From assembly GCF_006345805.1 (NCBI RefSeq), contig NC_043000.1:8680001-8744000 (forward strand): a stretch of DNA of 64,000 bases, given 5' to 3'. Below, in pieces: positions 7,718-60,626 of the stretch (its first letter is position 1; each line of letters begins with the position of its first letter). The stretch comes from Octopus sinensis. Lineage: Eukaryota. The notes below the pieces were generated by a model, which saw nothing but the letters and a program-made list of their open reading frames with translations, was not told the origin of the DNA and did no database searches. The position numbers and the translations under genes are program-made.

Positions 7718-10700
7718 TTATAACACCTCGTTGTAAACAATGTTCCTTGTTTTTCCTTGTAGAGCATATACAAAAAGGTTTCTTTTGGTTCCTACTCTTG
7801 AGCAGCCAACATACAGTTGCCCATGCGAGAAGCAGGGCTCTTCCAAGAGAAGACCAGCTACAGAGAGGGTTTGACCCTGAGATTTGTTAATGGACATGGC
7901 AGAGCTGACACGAAGGGGGAATTGCAGTCTTCTGAATGTAAATGGAATTTCTGCTCCTGATGGAGTAAGATGAATTCTTGGAATAAAGACGTCATCACCT
8001 TTTCCACATCCAGAAAGAATGATCGCCTCGATAACGTGTGACATCATTTTCTTTATCACCAGTCGTATTCCATTGCAAAGTCTTGGTGGTTCCAGATTGC
8101 GGAGTAGCATTACAGGAGTTCCAACTTTAAGTGCTAATATGTGTGGAGGTAGTCCAAGAGGCTCCAGTGAATTGAGAAATTCAGGAGGATAGTTCACAAC
8201 TCCATTTATATCTGGAATTGTATCAACAGACTTGTAAGTGTGTATAATGCCGGGAAGAGAATGCATTAGCTGTTGATTAATTTTGTTAACAGCGACGTTT
8301 TTTGGAGCTAATATTGCTCTTTCACACAGCCAATTGTGATTTTGGTAGTTTTGTGTGAAGTTGGGAAAGACTTCGTTTTTGAGGTCATCTACAGAATTAA
8401 CAACAGAGGAAAATGACCACACTTCCATTTGTCCTGCAGCATCGAGAGGCATCGCCTTCACCAAGTGTCAAAATGTCCTGTGCAAACTTTGTGGACATTT
8501 CGTCGCCGTGTAGCTGAGCTCTCATGTTAGTGGTGAGACAGGATTGTAACATGATACCACAGGGTAGAGGACTTTAGGCATGCTTGGACTTCATCTGCTC
8601 TAGTGCCTTTCGGAATGACAGGAAGAGCTTGCCTGAAATCACCTGACAACAGAAGCGTTACACTTCCCATTGGAGCCTGACAGTCTCGGATATCTTTCAG
8701 GGCTCTATCTAATGCTTCCAAAGCTCCCTTGTGAGTCATAGTGCACTCATCCCAGACAATTAGATGACACATTTTAAGTACTTGTCCCTGATCTGAGCTT
8801 TTGTTGATGTTGCATGAAGGCATTTCGGATGCTCCTAAATTGAGAGGGAGTTTAAAAGTTGAGTGTGCTGTCCTGCCATCAGGTAACAAAGTAGCTGCAA
8901 TGCCAGAGGAGGCTACAGCTACTGCAATGTCCTGATGCTACCTAACTTCTGCAAGGAGAAGCTTTGTAATAAATGTTTTTCCTGTCTCCCCAGGAACATC
9001 GAGGAGGAAGATTCGTCCCTCACGTTGGCGTACACTGTTAAGAATAGTTCTGTAGGCCTGCAGCTGGTCTGGAAGTAATTTAGGCTCATTTTCAACAATG
9101 TACCTTGAAAGCGCTTGAGTGTCGTAGGTTGTTTCACGAATGACAGCAGTGGGAAGGCTATTTGACTCTGACCTGAATGCTTGTGGCAGGCCATACGTCG
9201 ACAATTCATTTCCACCCAGTTTAGCAATTCTGTCTTCAATGTCAATGAGTGTTTTGTTATATATTTCATTGTTGATACCCTCCATGTCAGGATAGAGCAG
9301 TTGAGCTTGGCACGGAAAGTCTTCAGCCAGGTTGTCTCTATATTTGAGCCATAGAGTGCCGGATCACACAGTTCGCATGCCTGTAGTAATACTGCAAATA
9401 GTGCCCTGAGACTTTTAGGTGATTGTGATAAAGCAGCCTCTCCTAAAGTTGCATCCCATTGTGCACCATCTTCTAACAGACCTTGTTGATAGCAGGCTTC
9501 TCTGTATGTTGTGCAGACATGTCCATGAACGGTTTTTAGGGCCTGGAAAGACGTTGGCCCTCTGACCTCATGCAGTAGTAGACGAAGGTAGAAGCACTGT
9601 TGTTGAGTGGGATGCACTATGTATATTCGCCCAAAGCAAGTGTGAAACTTAATGCCAGGGTATCCATGAACATTTTGATCTGCTTTCCGTGGGGCCCATT
9701 TTTTTCCAAGTGTAGTACGATGAAATCTGTGGATACAGCAAGGTTTGAGCGAATGGATCCACATGACAAAGATTGAAGAATGCAGTGAGTGTGCTATCCC
9801 TTGGTTCCTCTGGCAACAGAGAAGCATTAGTATTGGTGAAGTACACTCTTTGACCATTTTCCAGGTGCACTGCAAGCTGTTGAATGGCGGGGTGTCGTTG
9901 GTGAATTGGAAAGCCAAAGATGCGCCAGAAAGCCTCGTTGCTACTTATGTACCGTCCCACCTGATAATGCGTCACCTCATCCTGGCAGTATTCTTGTTGA
10001 AGTCCAAACATTGCAGCGTCAGAACCCTTGTTTACATATTTGCAAACGTACTTGATGGATTTAACGGAGTTGCAAAACTCAACGTTGATGTGGGCATTGA
10101 AAGTCTTTGACAGGAATGGGCAGTATGGAACAATCCATCTATTATCAATGTCGTGCTGCCCGATCTTGTCCTCCCTCTTGTATAGAAGTGTACGGCTGCA
10201 GCGAAATTCATTTTTGGACTTTCTTCTATCGAAGGCATTTTAACAAAAATGCTTCCGTAAAGACGGACACAATTCAATTTTTAAACAATAACCAAAGACC
10301 CTTCTCTGAAAGGGGGAAGGTTACGGTTTACAATTATTTAACAAATGCAACACAACAACGTTTCCCTGACGAGGAACCAACATACGTGATTACAATAGTC
10401 AAACAGTAATAATAATAACAAACCTTTTTAATTTATCCCCATTTATGTGAAACCACTTATTCAAGTTCAAGTCATTGATGCAATTTTATACGAATTGCTA
10501 ATACACACACACACACATAATAAGGATGAAAAATTGAATATTAATTTGATTAATATGAATTGAAAACCAGTGGTGTAGCATATAAGACCACAACGGATCT
10601 TCTTCTAGCAAAAAGGATGACCATTGTTAATGGTTCATCCCTGTTATATAATACTTTCACTTTAATAGTGAAAGTGTCTGCATTACAAAAGAGAGATGTT

Positions 10701-36789: not shown

Positions 36790-37160
<371 letters not shown>

Positions 37161-37203
37161 AAATAATAATAACAATAATAATAATAATAATAATAATAAT
37201 AAT

Positions 37204-38963
37204 TTTCTGCTTTTCTGCTTGGCACTGTCACCTCTATCTGATATGCTAAATAGAACTGGATGCGGATATAAATGTTACGGCAAAACGATCAGCCACCTTT
37301 TATATATGGATGACCGAAAACTATACGCTGCAAATGACAAACAGCTGGAAACACTATTAAAGACAGTTCATGGATTTACCAAAGAAATAGATATGAAATT
37401 TGGATTAGAAAAATGCGCCAAAGTAACCATGAAAAGAGGAAAACTAGTTAAGAGTAACAACATCACACTAGATAAAACCAATGAAATAAAAGAATTAGAC
37501 CAAAGCCAAACTTACAAATACTTAGGAATCCATGAACTAGATAAGACACAACACACACAAATGAAAGAGAAAATAAAAAAAGAATATTATAGACGAGTTA
37601 GATCAATACTGAAAACAGAGCTCAATGCTAAAAACAAGATAATAGGTATCAACACTTTAGCCGTCCCAGTTATAAGTTACAGCTACAATATCCTTAACTG
37701 GACACGAAATGAACTGACCAAAATAGATAGGAAAACAAGAAAAATAATGACAGGATCTAGGATGCATCACCCAAAATCTGACATAGAAAGACTATATACA
37801 CAACGTATAGAAGGTGGTAGAGGGCTTATACAGCTGGAAAACTACTGTAAAATAACCACCATAGGACTGCAAAAATATCTACTTCAGAAGGAAGGAAAAC
37901 TGATACAAATAGCGGCAAAACACGAGCAAAACAAAAAACTGTTCTCAGTATTTAATGAAGCTGACAAATACAAACAAGAAATCATACCACCTAATAAACA
38001 TGAAGAAGAAGAAGAAGAAGATGAAGAAGCAACAAAAGCCATAAAACAAATGAAGTCCAAACTAAAAGTAGAACAGCAACGAACCATGATAAAACGATGG
38101 CAAGAAAAGCCCCTTCATGGTAAATACTGGACTAAACTAAACGCAAAAGAAATAGACAAAGAAAAATCCCAGCAATGGTTGAGAAGCTCAGGACTCAAAG
38201 CAGACACAGAGGGATTTTTAATTGCAGCACAAGACCAAAGCCTCCCCACCAGAAATTACCAAAAACATGTAATGAAAAGAAATATTACAAGTAACTGCAG
38301 AATATTCGGAGATGGACAAGAAACAATAAATCATATTATCTCTAGCTGCCCAGTCCTGGCTAAGAAGGAATATATTCACAGACATGACAGAGTTGGAACC
38401 TACATACACTGGAAGCTATGCCAACATTATGGAATAACAACAGAAAAAAGATGGTATAGGCACACACCAGAAAAGGTCACAGAAAACGAGAAAGCAACCA
38501 TACTCTGGGATATGCCGATACACACAGATAGAGAAATTAAGGCCAACAGACCAGATATAGTTGTCAGAGATCATGAAGAAAAAAATGCTTTCTAATTGAT
38601 GTATCAATACCAGCGGATGACAACGTGTCTCTAAAATAAATGGAGAAACTCTCAAAATACAAAGACCTGGAAATAGAGGTAACTAGAATGTGAAATCTGA
38701 AAACAGAAACAATTCCTATCATAGTAGGTGCATTAGGCATGATAAAAAAAATATTCAGACAAATACATAACAAAAACACCAGGACTTACAAACACATATA
38801 ACATACAGAAAATTGCACTACTAGGCACTACACACATCCTACGCAGAACACTTTCCATATAATAACCATCAGAGCATCACAACAAATCACAGCACATACC
38901 CAAGGCACACAGAGCTGCGCTCGGTAGTGAAGTGAAAGCACGCTATAAAAATAAAACTACTGA
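37204..38963 (+). mobile_element. 5'-truncated R4/Dong-type non-LTR retrotransposon (RT, zinc knuckle, restriction-like endonuclease)
   Basis: LLFCLALSPLS, HLLYMDDRKLYA, FGLEKC, YKYLG, GGRGL, CRIFG..ETINHIISSC, HRHDRV, LWDMPIHTDREIKANRPDIVV, then frameshifted LIDVSIP..KLSKYKDLEIE..IVGALG with two premature stops; flanked by (AAT)n on both sides. Confidence 0.92.
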
Positions 38964-56370: not shown

Positions 56371-59076
56371 GCGCGCGCGCGTGTGTATATGTTTGTGTCT
56401 GTGTTTGTCCCCCCAACATCGCCTGACAACCGATACTGGTATGTTTACGTCCCCGTAACTTAGCGGTTCGGCAAAAGAGACCGATAGAACAAGTACGAGG
56501 CTTACAAAGAATAAGTCCTTGGGTCGATTTGTTCGACTAAAGGCGGTGCTCCAGCATGGCCACAGTCAAATGACTGAAACAAGTAAAAGAGTAAAAGAGT
56601 TACTCATTAATTTAACCACGTCATAATGAAGAACTTTTGTTATACTTCTGCTTGAAATTTGGTTGCGGGTGCCCTGAAATAACACTGCACACTTCACAGA
56701 GCATCATGTTATAATATAGTACCGGGCGTTGGGAGAATGGCAAAAGATTAATGGCAAAGGGTCACATGTTCGAATTCGTGGAGCGAAGTTGTACATTTAA
56801 ATTAATCAAAAATTCCTAAATTCAAACTGTGGAGGCACATGACCTAGTGGTTAGAGCAGCGGACTCGTGGTCGAGGGATGTTGGGTTCGAATCTTAGACC
56901 GGGCGATGTATGCGTTTATGAACGAAACACCTAAGCTCCTCGCGGCTCCAGCAGAAGGAAATGGCGAATTTCTGCTGACTCAACTTTCTCTCACTCTTTC
57001 CTCTTGCAGCTCACCTGCGACGGACCGGCATCCCGTTCAGGTGGGAACCTATACGCCAGGGAAGCCGGTAAATCGGCCCCTGTGAACCAGGCGTGGCTCG
57101 AGAAGAAACAAACAAATTAAAACTAATTTTTTTACAATAATTTTTTCTTACAATATCATCATATAACTTTAATCTTAATTTGTTTTCAAAACTAATAATA
57201 CACCAAGAAATCAGAAACTTAAATCGGGTCGAATTCTGGAGCTGTTAGTGCACCAAACACTGTAAGTTCGGGCAGTATCAGTTGTTTTGTTGTTAGTCAC
57301 TAAAAACGATTCGATGTGGAAGGTTGTGCGTTGATATTTTGCTCAGTGGATCTTGTGTGTGCTTAAGCATTATATTTAAAATTTAATTTTAAAGTATCGT
57401 GGAGGCCCGTGGTTTAGTGGTTAGGGTGTCAGTATCATGATCGTAAGATTGTGGTTTCGATTCCTGGACCGGGCGACGTGTTGTGTTCTTGAGCAAAACA
57501 CTTCATTTCACGTTGCTCCTGTCCAGTCAGCTGGCAAAAATGAGTAACGCTGCGATGGACTGGCGTCCCGTCCAGCTGGGGAACACATACGCAATAGAAA
57601 TCGGCAAACCGGGCCCATGAGCCTGGCTAGGCTTTAGAAAGGCGCAAAAAATATTATAAAGTATTATAAATTCAGTTTACTTTAGTGTCATATATCTGTA
57701 TCCCAATTGAATTTTATTTACATTTTGGACCCACATTTTGAATAGAAATACAGTTTGTATGCCTAATTTGAATAATACTAATGTTAGTCATAGTATGGTC
57801 AGTGTGGCAGCACACCCAATGACAACAGCCACCACACGTTATTGCCTCCCAGGGTTTACATGGACCCTGGTTGAGAACCACTGGTCTAACGAAATGAAAC
57901 AATGAATAAAATCACTTCATGGAGCTTTTGACAGTCACGACTTGATTACCTTTGATAAAAGGTTTACACGAACAGGAATTGCCTAAAATTAGGTTTGAAA
58001 AATAACAAGAACGCCCCTACATACAAAATTTTATAGCTAAATATACCGAATGGTATATTTAGCTATGAAACTTATTTCTGATAATAATTACTTCCTTCAG
58101 AGATCCCCCCCCCACTTCTTTTTACCAAATGAATTCAACAAGGTTATTTGATATTGCTGTTTCTCTTTCTTTAACTTGATAGCTAGGATCTCATCCTTTG
58201 CACCATCTAAGACAAAGGAAATATATAGCATAATGACTTTAAAGAAAGACAACGGAACTTTCATTTCATTTCGTCAAAAAACCCGGATGTCAAGCCCAAC
58301 GATATTGAAATTTGTACACAATAGGTAATTTTTTACAACAATCAATTAATCTTTACACAGCACCGCAAATATTAGAAGAGTGTTGTTATTAACTATAATC
58401 ATTGAACAATGAAATTTATTTTAAATGGACGCAGCTTTTGTCAACAACTCAGATCATATTAATTTTTTTCCCATTTAGGGATTTTGTAAAATAGTAATTT
58501 CTTTGCAATCAAATATTTGAGCTTTTTGAACTAAAAGGAAATATTTGAACTTATTTCCTTTGACATTGAGTTTTAAGAATAGGCTATTGTAGAGTGAGAA
58601 ATTATAGAATTATTAATAATTTGAATTATTACCAAGTAGAGATAACGGTATTATACCTTGACAAAAAGAAAAACCAAAAACAAACCAAGCAATAAAGATA
58701 TATAACAAAACTCCTTATTGAGAGCTTCCGTACGCTCAGTTCCTGAAATTTACACCATCTCAAATCTATTATATTAAAGTGCTAAGGACAGATTCCTGTG
58801 GTGTAAACAATCTGTCACGCTACTCTGTCATTCTGTGGAACGGAGGTGGTAAATGTGTGAGCGGGGGGAGAGAAAGAGAGAGAGAGAGAGAGAGAGATAG
58901 ATAGATAGAGAGATTAAAACGAATTCTACTGGCACATACACACATTTACACATCTCTCTCTCTTTTACCTTCTATATTAAAATGCCAAGTGAATGATGGA
59001 AATGTATGTACAAGAGAGAAACAAATGCCATTGCTTCATACACACACTAATACGCATACGAAAGCTATTGGCGAGT

Positions 59077-59112
<36 letters not shown>

Positions 59113-59269
59113 GCGCGCGCATGCACACACATACACACACACAGAAGCAACATCTTAAACCGTATAATGTCCACAGATTCATCTAGTAACATTGATATTT
59201 TAATGAAATCTTTTAAAGTTACCTGCCGGTAAAAACAACACATATATTAAGATAATGGCACTACTTAAT

Positions 59270-59275
59270 TTTATT
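59270..59275 (-). promoter_or_regulatory. Candidate polyadenylation signal (AATAAA) for the kinin-like gene
   Basis: tttatt on + strand about 170 nt downstream of the stop codon; another candidate at 58415-58420. Weak in AT-rich DNA. Confidence 0.25.
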
Positions 59276-59447
59276 TTCATAATTTTTCCAAAGAAATCCA
59301 GGACAATATTTTCATCAGTAATTTTCTTTTCTATATGTGAACCCTGAACTTTTACATGGTTATTTTATAAAGAACACAAGTTTACTCGATAAGTTTTATG
59401 CTTGGTCAAAAATTTTCGACGCCTTATTCCATATTTTTTTTAAACCT

Positions 59448-59842
59448 TTATTTCCCACCCCAAGGGGAAAAGTTGCGCTTTCTGTAATATTCCCGGATTT
59501 TATTTCTCAGCTCTGGGTTACTCTTCATTTGCTCCTTTAGAATGTCTATAGGTATACTGTTTGAGTTAGAAACGTCTCTTTTACCACCCCATGGGTTGAA
59601 ACCCTTTTTTCTTTCGTAGAGTATCTCGGCTGGCTGGATTTTGTTATCAGGAAAATCAATGCTGTACAGACGATTAGTACGTCTGACTCGTTTTTCGACC
59701 CATGGGCGCAAACCCGATCTTTCTTTATCTAGACTCATATCAGAAAACACCATTGAATGCCCTTCTTCATTGATCATATTGTTGCAAGGGAATTCGTCTG
59801 AGCATCGGGCTTGTACTTGTACCGTTTTAATGAGAAGCACAA
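59448..59842 (-). CDS. Kinin/leucokinin-like neuropeptide precursor, main (last) coding exon
   Basis: ORF 59448-59933 encodes ...RKK-GFNPWG-G-KR... and ...RKR-NFSPWG-G-K-stop (FxPWG plus amide-donor Gly, basic cleavage sites) and a degenerate ER-SGLRPWVE-KR copy; the signal-peptide-like end VVLLIKTVQVQA precedes RCSDEFPC. Minus strand shows a polypyrimidine tract and AG (tttcctctttttttatttctag|TT GTG) at 59844-59843, so the exon probably starts at 59842 in phase 1. Confidence 0.85.
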
Positions 59843-60129
59843 CTAGAAATAAAAAAAGAGGAAATATATATTGATTGTGATGAAAAATATGTAAATATAA
59901 ATATGTGAATACAATGTTCAACAAAAATATCAAACATCAAAGCCAACGTTTTGATCCAATAAAAACTAATTAAGTTAAAATTAAAGAATTCAGCTTTAGC
60001 CAAATTCAGAAAGTCTTGAAACGGAATTACTTTTAATAAATATCATAAATATCTCCAATATTAACCTTAATAACTCCAACAAAGGAAGAAAAAAATCAAG
60101 TATTCTTGTGTGTGTGAGAGAGAGAGAGA

Positions 60130-60180
<51 letters not shown>

Positions 60181-60589: not shown

Positions 60590-60626
<37 letters not shown>

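What the first reader, a model, noticed from the sequence alone, without database searches (positions are those of the whole stretch)
59448..59933. Compact kinin-like precursor with two FxPWG-amides, one degenerate copy and a Cys pair
Seen: predicted GFNPWGa and NFSPWGa (the latter ending G-K-stop), a non-amidated SGLRPWVE relic, and an N-terminal RCSDEFPC segment with two Cys. Known: FxxWG-amide is the kinin (leucokinin) signature. Inference: a low-copy cephalopod kinin-type gene with insect-like FxPWG peptides, easily missed by annotation since it is short and isolated among repeats; spacer peptides may be additional products.
Basis: partly seen in the sequence, partly recalled or inferred. 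Interest (0 to 1): 0.78.

Follow-up and report, generated by a model that had tools for sequence, protein, structure and literature searches.

The report
Octopus kinin (leucokinin) neuropeptide gene exon
This stretch is the main coding exon of a real, transcribed octopus gene for a small kinin-type (leucokinin) neuropeptide precursor; databases list it only as "uncharacterized", but it is the octopus counterpart of a gene family already reported in cuttlefish, so it is a sound but ordinary find.

Summary
On the minus strand, 59448-59933 is an open frame containing GFNPWG-GKR, NFSPWG-GK-stop, a degenerate LRPWVE-KR site and an RCSDEFPC Cys pair. Only 59448-59842 is coding. 59843-59933 is intron read through from a spurious TTG, and the exon starts at a phase-1 acceptor (tttctag|TT). 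Exon 1, encoding the first 17 residues, is outside the window; in O. bimaculoides the intron is about 39.4 kb.

The exon matches 100% an annotated 148-aa protein of Octopus vulgaris/O. sinensis, named "hypothetical/uncharacterized". Orthologs exist in O. bimaculoides (90% identity, with a spliced transcript), Argonauta hians (52%) and the cuttlefish Sepia esculenta (expressed, four intact copies). An exhaustive HMMER search returned ten inspected hits that are all multi-copy F-x-(P/S)-W-G-G-K-R precursors, plus one 2153-aa hit not inspected; a second search also hit "leucokinin [Urechis unicinctus]".

The "relic" reading is right: LRPWVEKR aligns with intact KFNPWGGKR (Sepia) and RFHPWGGKR (chiton). 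A rival label, UniRef's "CRF domain-containing protein" for the O. bimaculoides ortholog, failed three tests.

Verdict: a new, unnamed member of a known family, since two prepro-leucokinins are already published for Sepia officinalis. Peptide production and receptor activity remain inferred. Interest is low to moderate.

The parts
59258..59842 (-). Exon 2 (the last exon) of the kinin precursor gene: coding part plus at least 190 nt of 3'UTR
   Evidence: O. bimaculoides transcript contig L004 bases 316-907 align to window 59845..59258 at 94.4% identity. The same transcript maps to its own genome as two blocks about 39.4 kb apart. The contig ends at 59258, so the true 3' end may lie further downstream.
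59843..59933 (-). 3' end of the intron (polypyrimidine tract and AG acceptor), wrongly included in the mechanical ORF
   Evidence: The sequence reads tcctctttttttatttctag|TTGTGC. The first exon base is 59842, in phase 1. The annotated protein P0001 has MMIRSKELCLVMLQLCI in place of this stretch.
59448..59842 (-). Coding part of exon 2: residues 18-148 of the 148-aa precursor, plus the TAA stop
   Evidence: 100% identical to P0001 (CAI9722286.1 O. vulgaris; XP_029634720.1 O. sinensis).
59808..59842 (-). C-terminal half of the predicted signal peptide (…VVLLIKTVQVQA), with predicted cleavage after A29
   Evidence: Mean Kyte-Doolittle hydropathy of residues 8-22 is 3.19, against a maximum of 0.97 in the rest of the protein. 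There are basic residues at R4 and K6, and a V-Q-A motif at -3/-1. This is by inspection only; no SignalP was run.
59784..59807 (-). RCSDEFPC: C-x5-C pair at the N-terminus of the propeptide
   Evidence: The pair is conserved in O. bimaculoides (identical), Argonauta (RCTGDFPC) and Sepia esculenta/P0019 (GCQGNTDC), and is absent from the chiton precursor. A disulfide bond and any function are inferred.
59688..59717 (-). SGLRPWVEKR: degenerate (relic) kinin copy, with F changed to L, the C-terminal G to V and the amide-donor G to E
   Evidence: It aligns column for column with KFNPWGGKR of Sepia and RFHPWGGKR of the chiton. It has decayed further in Argonauta (LHPWEERE, with the following KR lost).
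59604..59687 (-). Spacer VRR-TNRLYSIDFPDNKIQPAEILYE-RKK
   Evidence: It is bounded by dibasic sites. The LY(S/T)ID core is conserved in Argonauta. Whether it is released as a peptide is inferred.
59577..59603 (-). GFNPWG-G-KR: kinin copy giving predicted GFNPWG-amide
   Evidence: The FNPWGGKR core is invariant in O. bimaculoides and Argonauta. The only nucleotide difference from O. bimaculoides is synonymous.
59484..59576 (-). 31-aa spacer DVSNSNSIPIDILKEQMKSNPELRNKIREYY, the stretch behind UniRef's 'CRF domain' label on the ortholog
   Evidence: The I-P-x3-L motif is conserved across coleoids. CRF homology was not supported.
59475..59483 (-). R-K-R processing site ahead of the last copy
   Evidence: K-R is invariant in all five cephalopod sequences. 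Y-R-K-R fits the R-x-K-R convertase consensus (established knowledge).
59451..59474 (-). NFSPWG-G-K: terminal kinin copy giving predicted NFSPWG-amide
   Evidence: FSPWGGK-stop is identical in O. bimaculoides and Argonauta. Sepia has GFSPWAGK-stop. There are no nucleotide differences from O. bimaculoides in the core.
59448..59450 (-). TAA stop codon

Best explanation
Window 59448-59842 (minus strand) is the coding part of the second and last exon of the Octopus vulgaris/sinensis gene LOC115210327. The gene is a two-exon, 148-residue secretory prepropeptide of the kinin (leucokinin) family.

Shown here: the gene model, the splice junction, transcription in a sister species, conservation of both F-x-P-W-G-G-K(R) sites across octopodiforms, orthology with a four-copy cuttlefish precursor, and sequence relatedness to kinin-type precursors of other protostomes.

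Inferred from standard prohormone processing rules: the signal peptide is removed after A29. Convertases cut at EKR, VRR, RKK, GKR and RKR, carboxypeptidase trims the basic residues, and the exposed glycines are converted to C-terminal amides. This gives GFNPWG-amide and NFSPWG-amide. By analogy with other kinins, these would act on a leucokinin-receptor-type GPCR.

The first site (LRPWVE) is a dead copy. It lacks the Phe, the terminal Gly and the amide donor. The Octopus lineage has therefore gone from the four kinin sites seen in Sepia to two functional ones. The Cys-loop N-terminal piece and two spacer peptides are co-products of unknown role; the Cys loop may be a sorting or folding element.
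For: - Exact 148-aa match to annotated proteins of O. vulgaris and O. sinensis.
- O. bimaculoides ortholog at 90% identity, with all motif residues invariant.
- A 907-nt Logan contig (L004, run SRR32601320) carries the complete O. bimaculoides CDS uninterrupted and maps to that genome as two exons about 39.4 kb apart. Its exon 2 aligns to window 59845..59258.
- Argonauta ortholog: 52% identity, E = 2e-53. All 19 core positions (FNPWGGKR + RKRNFSPWGGK) are identical, P about 1e-6 under random placement of identities.
- Sepia esculenta larval RNA-seq ortholog: collinear end to end, E = 1e-11, with the same C-x5-C pair and the same G-K-stop ending.
- The acceptor is in the same phase (1) inside the signal peptide on a decapodiform genomic contig.
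- An exhaustive HMMER search of 1.84 billion proteins returned 12 proteins including the query. The ten inspected are all repeated F-x-(P/S)-W-G-G-K-R precursors from a nemertean, a scorpion, a spider and unnamed sources; one 2153-aa hit (P0008) was not inspected.
- A second search hit 'leucokinin [Urechis unicinctus]' at E = 9.6e-8.
- The motif does not occur by chance in the window: 2 observed against 0 in 200 shuffles.
- The family definition FX1X2WX3-amide, with FXPWG-amide typical of insects, is given in PMC7913504.
- All 14 replacements between O. vulgaris and O. bimaculoides in the exon fall outside the Cys pair, the relic core LRPWVEKR, the kinin pentapeptide cores and the dibasic sites; one of them (N141T) changes the first residue of the terminal hexapeptide.
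Against: - No mature peptide, tissue of expression or receptor was examined. All processing and signalling steps are inferred.
- Exon 1 and the promoter are outside the window.
- Matches to kinin precursors of other phyla rest largely on the short repeated motif plus its flanking dibasic sites. They show family resemblance rather than deep full-length homology.
- Overall dN/dS between the two Octopus species is high (0.77, on about 22 substitutions), so most of the precursor is only weakly constrained.
- No transcript from O. vulgaris itself was recovered. The expression evidence comes from O. bimaculoides and Sepia.
Confidence: 0.9

Rival explanations
1. The gene is, or contains, the 'missing' cephalopod CRF/DH44/ELH-type hormone. 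On this reading, the last 40 residues (DVSNSNSIPIDILKEQMKSNPELRNKIREYYRKRNFSPWG-amide) are released intact as a long amidated class-B-GPCR ligand, and the kinin-like tail is only its C-terminus.
For: - UniRef names the O. bimaculoides ortholog 'Corticotropin-releasing factor domain-containing protein'.
- The Pfam CRF model aligns to residues 5-18 of the Argonauta segment at 11.2 bits.
No shuffle in 2000 reached either score.
- The segment length (40 aa plus amide) fits the family.
- DH44/ELH has been reported as not found in cephalopods (PMC6425005).
Against: - The Pfam CRF hit is far below the gathering score (11.2 against 22.1 bits, E = 0.41). There is no hit at all for the window's own sequence, for O. 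bimaculoides, or for Sepia esculenta/P0019.
- A profile of molluscan DH44/ELH domains taken from the literature scores every cephalopod segment no better than shuffles (192-691 of 2000 shuffles score as high).
- Profile-profile hhalign gives 1.2% probability, covering 17 columns of the N-terminal motif only.
- No PDB CRF or urocortin chain is matched.
- An invariant K-R (R-K-R in octopods) sits six residues before the C-terminus, so cleavage into a spacer plus a hexapeptide is expected.
- The same terminal peptide type recurs elsewhere in the precursor, as in multi-copy kinin genes.
Confidence: 0.03
2. The ORF is a chance open frame or a decayed pseudogene fragment in repeat-rich, AT-rich DNA, and the WGGK(R) motifs are coincidental.
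For: - ORF length is within the range of shuffled sequence.
- The surroundings are microsatellites and transposon fragments.
- There is no ATG start in the window.
- One of the three sites is degenerate.
- dN/dS is 0.77.
Against: - A spliced transcript exists in the sister species.
- The reading frame is intact in four octopodiform species and in a cuttlefish.
- The motif cores are perfectly conserved at 52% overall identity, P about 1e-6.
- The motif never appears in shuffles.
- The missing ATG is explained by an upstream exon.
Confidence: 0.01
3. The gene is a secreted kinin-like peptide used outside the nervous system, for example as a salivary-gland (venom) peptide mimicking arthropod prey kinins. 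Octopus salivary tachykinins are a precedent for this.
For: - Both peptides match arthropod-type FxPWG-amide cores exactly.
- Cephalopods are known, from established knowledge, to deploy neuropeptide-like peptides in the posterior salivary gland.
- The tissue of expression was not determined here.
Against: - The same core occurs in the endogenous kinin precursors of non-predatory lophotrochozoans: Urechis, a nemertean and a chiton. No prey mimicry is needed to explain it.
- The ortholog is expressed in whole cuttlefish larvae.
- No paper in the library links kinins to cephalopod venom.
- The copy number is low, which is unusual for a secreted toxin precursor.
Confidence: 0.04

Closest known systems
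Cuttlefish prepro-leucokinins: two in Sepia officinalis (Zatylny-Gaudin et al. 2016, cited in PMC7913504), and the Sepia esculenta transcript P0012 found here
   Same: Same gene architecture: an intron in phase 1 inside the signal peptide, a C-x5-C pair just after the signal peptide, kinin copies flanked by dibasic sites, an I-P-x3-L-L spacer, and a last copy ending G-K-stop. The two are collinear end to end.
   Different: Sepia esculenta has four intact copies (KFNPWG-, SFSPWA-, TRFHPWH- and GFSPWA-amide). Octopus has two, both ending WG-amide, plus one relic; the stretch carrying Sepia's second and third copies is shortened. Identity is only 25-32%. I could not read the S. officinalis sequences, so which of its two precursors is the ortholog is untested.
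Chiton (Acanthochitona crinita) compact two-copy FHPWG precursor, from the De Oliveira et al. 2019 supplement
   Same: A short precursor (122 aa) with only two copies. The first follows an N-terminal propeptide and the second lies at the extreme C-terminus (…RRKFHPWGGR-end).
   Different: It has no Cys pair and a different spacer. Its first copy is intact where the Octopus copy is a relic.
Multi-copy kinin precursors of other protostomes: Urechis unicinctus leucokinin, Platynereis leucokinin, Tubulanus, and arachnid and insect kinins
   Same: The same F-x-(P/S)-W-(G/S/A)-G-K-R processing unit, and the identical pentapeptide cores FNPWG and FSPWG.
   Different: Those precursors carry about 4 to 30 tandem copies with short acidic spacers. 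The octopus gene has two functional copies, long spacers and a Cys loop.
Gastropod leucokinins: lymnokinin PSFHSWS-amide and the Aplysia ALK precursor
   Same: Same family, defined by FX1X2WX3-amide (PMC7913504).
   Different: Lymnokinin ends W-S-amide, and the Aplysia precursor may give rise to about 60 peptides, more than 30 of them amidated LKs. Octopus keeps the W-G-amide ending and a minimal precursor.
CRF/DH44/ELH hormone family (Pfam PF00473)
   Same: A short S-x-S-I-x-x-P-x-x-x-L-(K/R)-(E/Q) stretch in the last spacer resembles the N-terminal motif of the family, and the segment length is similar.
   Different: It is below every significance threshold for the window's sequence. It shows no similarity to molluscan DH44/ELH, and an internal R-K-R site interrupts the segment.

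Membership tests
Kinin / leucokinin neuropeptide precursors | One or more peptides with the C-terminal core F-X1-X2-W-(G/S/A), followed by an amide-donor Gly and a basic cleavage site or the stop codon | tested here: met
   GFNPWG-G-KR and NFSPWG-G-K-stop. The definition is taken from PMC7913504. There are 2 occurrences in the window against 0 in 200 shuffles.
Kinin / leucokinin neuropeptide precursors | Secretory precursor with an N-terminal signal peptide | tested here: met
   In the full protein P0001, residues 8-22 have mean hydropathy 3.19, basic residues lie at positions 4 and 6, and V-Q-A precedes R30. This is by inspection only, as no signal-peptide predictor was available, and half of the signal peptide lies on exon 1 outside the window.
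Kinin / leucokinin neuropeptide precursors | Sequence searches recover kinin precursors rather than another peptide family | tested here: met
   The ten HMMER hits inspected are all F-x-(P/S)-W-G-G-K-R repeat precursors; one further hit (P0008, 2153 aa) was not inspected. 'leucokinin [Urechis unicinctus]' is hit at E = 9.6e-8 and in pairwise BLASTP at 4e-8. Pfam has no model that hits the protein.
Kinin / leucokinin neuropeptide precursors | Conservation of the peptide cores and processing sites in related species | tested here: met
   The cores are invariant in O. bimaculoides and Argonauta, P about 1e-6 at 52% overall identity. The Sepia ortholog retains all sites.
Kinin / leucokinin neuropeptide precursors | Gene is transcribed | tested here: met
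   A spliced O. bimaculoides contig (L004) spans a 39.4-kb intron. The Sepia esculenta ortholog comes from larval RNA-seq. No O. vulgaris transcript was recovered, and the tissue is unknown.
Kinin / leucokinin neuropeptide precursors | Mature amidated peptides detectable in tissue | not testable with these tools
   This needs mass spectrometry. The expected [M+H]+ values are 676.320 and 706.331.
Kinin / leucokinin neuropeptide precursors | Peptides activate a leucokinin-receptor-type GPCR of the same species | not tested
   The octopus LKR ortholog was not looked for. LKR-type GPCRs are reported in molluscs generally (PMC8557429).
CRF / DH44 / ELH hormones | Match to the family profile (Pfam PF00473) at or above the gathering score | tested here: not met
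   No hit at E <= 10 for P0001, P0002, P0012, P0019 or the Octopus segments. The Argonauta segment scores 11.2 bits against a cutoff of 22.1.
CRF / DH44 / ELH hormones | Similarity to the molluscan or other lophotrochozoan DH44/ELH domain over its length | tested here: not met
   An HMM of 17 molluscan domains scores all five cephalopod segments within the shuffle distribution. hhalign gives a probability of 1.2%.
CRF / DH44 / ELH hormones | A single uninterrupted amidated peptide of about 38-47 aa | tested here: not met
   An invariant K-R (R-K-R in octopods) lies six residues before the C-terminus. Whether it is cleaved in vivo is not testable here.

The most novel reading that the evidence does not exclude
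The last spacer plus the terminal kinin is a remnant, or an alternative processing product, of a CRF/DH44-type hormone. On this reading, coleoid cephalopods, which are reported to lack DH44/ELH, retain a DH44-like N-terminal motif fused into their kinin precursor. Two diuretic-hormone systems that are separate in insects would then share one gene. A weaker version is that the conserved Cys-loop N-terminal peptide or the I-P-x3-L-L spacer is a distinct, coleoid-specific bioactive peptide.
Probability: 0.04. Interest if true: 0.75.

Novelty: new member of a known kind. Interest (0 to 1): 0.25.

Why it matters
It gives a functional name to a gene that is labelled only "uncharacterized" or "hypothetical" in Octopus vulgaris, O. 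sinensis, O. bimaculoides and Argonauta. It also corrects a misleading automatic "CRF domain" label.

It supplies two concrete predicted ligands, GFNPWG-amide and NFSPWG-amide, for deorphanising an octopus leucokinin-type receptor.

It documents decay of copy number within coleoids, from four kinin sites in cuttlefish to two plus a relic in octopods. It also shows that the W-G-amide "insect-type" core is widespread in lophotrochozoans.

None of this changes the general picture of kinin signalling. The value lies in annotation and in giving octopus neurobiology a usable reagent list.

Tried and rejected
1. ORF length as evidence: rejected, because 162 codons lies within the shuffle range.
2. 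Pfam scans of the precursor and its orthologs: no family.
3. Looking for exon 1 in the window: absent. The 39.4-kb intron in O. bimaculoides explains this.
4. The CRF/DH44 hypothesis, prompted by the UniRef name and by eye: tested with Pfam, PDB sequences, two custom HMMs with 2000 shuffles each, and hhalign. Only Argonauta and one decapodiform sequence give a weak signal at the N-terminal motif, and only against arthropod/vertebrate members. Nothing is seen for the window's sequence or against molluscan DH44/ELH. Rejected as homology.
5. Reading the original Sepia officinalis neuropeptidome paper and the Aplysia leucokinin paper: neither is held.
6. Tracing runs SRR32601320, SRR25158138, SRR28400122 and assembly ERZ21867824 to organisms or tissues: no paper found.
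7. Looking for a second octopus kinin gene: none appeared among the hits. A paralog without PWGGK-type words would have been missed.
8. Structure prediction was not run, because a processed neuropeptide precursor is not expected to have an informative fold.

Full report
**1. The observation**

It contains these features (coordinates):
- RCSDEFPC at 59784-59807.
- SGLRPWVEKR at 59688-59717.
- GFNPWGGKR at 59577-59603.
- NFSPWGGK followed by TAA at 59448-59474.

Length alone does not distinguish the ORF. It is 162 codons stop-to-stop, while mononucleotide shuffles of this 35.7% GC window give maxima averaging 135 and reaching 176, and the window has 15 stop-to-stop ORFs at least as long. The motif does distinguish it. 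F-x-[PS]-W-G-G-[KR] occurs twice in the whole six-frame translation, both times here, against none in 200 shuffles.

**2. Gene structure**

The first 91 nt of the ORF are not coding. The sequence tcctctttttttatttctag|TTGTGC is a polypyrimidine tract and AG acceptor, and the first exon base is 59842, in phase 1.

The exon matches 100% a 148-aa annotated protein. It is CAI9722286.1 "hypothetical predicted protein" in Octopus vulgaris, and the identical XP_029634720.1 "uncharacterized protein LOC115210327" in O. sinensis. That protein begins MMIRSKELCLVMLQLCI, which is not encoded anywhere in the window.

The O. bimaculoides ortholog (XP_014788998.1, 90% identical) is carried complete on a 907-nt Logan contig. 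That contig maps to the O. bimaculoides genome as two blocks about 39.4 kb apart. Its second block aligns to window 59845..59258 at 94.4% identity. This confirms the acceptor, shows that the gene is transcribed and spliced, and explains the missing first exon: the window extends only about 4.2 kb upstream. The 3'UTR runs at least to 59258.

**3. Conservation**

- An Argonauta hians ortholog (152 aa, 52% identity, E = 2e-53) keeps the C-x5-C pair (RCTGDFPC), SFNPWGGKR and RKRNFSPWGGK-stop. Its first site has decayed further, to LHPWEERE. All 19 core positions are identical at 52% overall identity, which has P of about 1e-6 if identities were placed at random.
- A 168-aa protein assembled from run SRR19578101 is collinear with the octopus protein from signal peptide to stop (E = 1e-11). 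That run is listed among the Sepia esculenta transcriptome accessions in PMC10141105. The protein has the same C-x5-C pair (GCQGNTDC) and the same G-K-stop ending. It carries four intact sites: KFNPWG-, SFSPWA-, TRFHPWH- and GFSPWA-amide.
- A related ORF on a decapodiform genomic contig has a phase-1 acceptor inside the signal peptide, within about two codons of the Octopus position.
- Between O. vulgaris and O. bimaculoides, exon-wide dN/dS is 0.77 on small counts, so most of the precursor is only weakly constrained. All 14 replacements lie outside the Cys pair, the relic core LRPWVEKR, the kinin pentapeptide cores and the dibasic sites; one (N141T) changes the first residue of the terminal hexapeptide. 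The only nucleotide changes within the four motif stretches examined are two synonymous ones. This pattern is usual for neuropeptide precursors.

**4. Family**

An exhaustive HMMER search of 1.84 billion representative proteins returned twelve proteins, including the query. The ten I inspected are all precursors with repeated F-x-(P/S)-W-G-G-K-R units. Their sources include the nemertean Tubulanus polymorphus, a scorpion and a spider. One further hit, a 2153-aa protein (P0008), was not inspected.

A word-seeded search with the alignment of compact precursors also recovered "leucokinin [Urechis unicinctus]" at E = 9.6e-8 (pairwise 4e-8).

The Nässel and Wu review defines the family by FX1X2WX3-amide, with FXSWG- or FXPWG-amide typical of insects. 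FNPWG and FSPWG appear in the literature as arthropod kinin cores.

The same W-G-amide core is present in Tubulanus, in Urechis and in a chiton precursor from the De Oliveira et al. supplement. The chiton precursor is also compact, with two copies, the last at the C-terminus. The octopus peptides are therefore not peculiarly insect-like. W-G-amide is probably the ancestral form, and the W-S-amide ending of gastropod lymnokinin would then be derived.

**5. The relic**

In the multiple alignment, the octopus LRPWVEKR occupies the same columns as KFNPWGGKR in Sepia and RFHPWGGKR in the chiton. It has lost the Phe, the terminal Gly and the amide-donor Gly. In Argonauta it has also lost the following dibasic site.

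**6. How it most likely works (inferred)**

The signal peptide would be removed after A29: the hydrophobic core at residues 8-22 has mean hydropathy 3.19, and V-Q-A lies at -3/-1. Convertases would cut at EKR, VRR, RKK, GKR and RKR. Carboxypeptidase trimming and amidation would then give GFNPWG-amide and NFSPWG-amide.

The predicted co-products are a 38-aa N-terminal piece with a probable seven-residue disulfide loop, a 22-aa spacer and a 31-aa spacer.

By analogy with kinins elsewhere, the amides would act on a leucokinin-receptor-type GPCR. Such receptors are reported in molluscs. I did not look for the octopus receptor.

**7. Rival: CRF/DH44**

UniRef names the O. bimaculoides ortholog "Corticotropin-releasing factor domain-containing protein". 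De Oliveira et al. report that ELH/DH44 could not be found in cephalopods. The last spacer, especially Argonauta's SNSISLPLSVLREHM, resembles the N-terminal motif of the family. I therefore tested this reading in four ways:
- Pfam's CRF model hits only the Argonauta segment, at 11.2 bits and E = 0.41 against a gathering score of 22.1. It gives nothing for either Octopus protein or for the two decapodiform proteins.
- A profile of 17 molluscan DH44/ELH domains copied from the paper's supplement scores all five cephalopod segments within their shuffle distributions.
Both Octopus segments score about 0.
- hhalign of the cephalopod segments against the combined CRF/DH44/ELH alignment gives 1.2% probability over 17 columns. 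No PDB CRF-family chain is matched.

An invariant K-R (R-K-R in octopods) lies six residues before the C-terminus. I conclude that the label reflects a short local resemblance and not membership. I keep it only as the low-probability novel reading.

**8. Context**

The exon lies between dinucleotide microsatellites. The rest of the window contains transposon-derived ORFs: reverse transcriptase at 37054-38592 and a Pif1-type helicase fragment at 7721-8467.

**9. Novelty and verdict**

Cephalopod kinin precursors are already published: two prepro-LKs in Sepia officinalis (Zatylny-Gaudin et al. 2016, cited in PMC7913504). I could not read that paper. No paper in the library describes an octopus kinin gene, and all octopodiform database entries are unnamed.

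The finding is therefore a correct identification of a new, unnamed member of a known family. Its modest extras are copy-number decay with a traceable relic, a coleoid-specific Cys loop, and a mislabelled ortholog. Peptide production, site of expression and receptor pairing remain to be shown.

Noticed in passing
window 37054-38592 (+): The longest open frame in the window (513 codons stop-to-stop) carries reverse-transcriptase (RVT_1, E = 1e-7) and zf-RVT domains. It is probably a non-LTR retrotransposon fragment.
   Followed up: partly
window 7721-8467 (-), with neighbouring ORFs 8922-9944 and 9652-10239 (-): A Pif1-helicase 2B domain (E = 1.6e-16) lies in a 249-codon frame. The adjacent long frames have no Pfam hit. 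Together they may be a Helitron-type or Pif1-like element fragment.
   Followed up: partly
window 58868-58913, 59078-59143, 60116-60180, 60592-60626: Dinucleotide microsatellites, (GA)n, (CA)n, (GA)n and (AT)n, flank the kinin exon on both sides.
   Followed up: yes
O. bimaculoides ortholog P0002 (XP_014788998.1), database annotation: UniRef names it 'Corticotropin-releasing factor domain-containing protein'. Pfam, custom HMMs and hhalign do not support a CRF domain, so the name looks like an over-call from a marginal signature match to the last spacer.
   Followed up: yes
L005 10001-10513 (ENA assembly ERZ21867824, contig ctg60661l): An unannotated decapodiform genomic contig carries exon 2 of the four-copy kinin gene, read through from the intron just as in this window. 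It has a phase-1 acceptor (ttgattttacag|GT). The organism was not identified.
   Followed up: partly
L001 641-1579 (-), Sepia esculenta Logan contig: The 1580-nt contig carrying the cuttlefish kinin transcript also has a 312-residue open frame on the opposite strand, running to the contig end. It could be a chimeric assembly or an overlapping or neighbouring transcript. It was not examined.
   Followed up: no
L006 204-833 (Logan SRR28400122) = P0009: A 209-aa multi-copy precursor (EFSPWG, GFNPWG x5, AFQPWG, and others) of unknown organism was among the better hits. It could be a second cephalopod-type or other lophotrochozoan kinin gene. Its source could not be traced.
   Followed up: partly
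P0008 (2153 aa), hit: A very long protein matched profile positions 23-72 (the N-terminal propeptide and relic region) at E = 6.7e-6. It was not fetched or inspected, so it is unclear whether it is a giant kinin precursor of the Aplysia type or an unrelated match.
   Followed up: no
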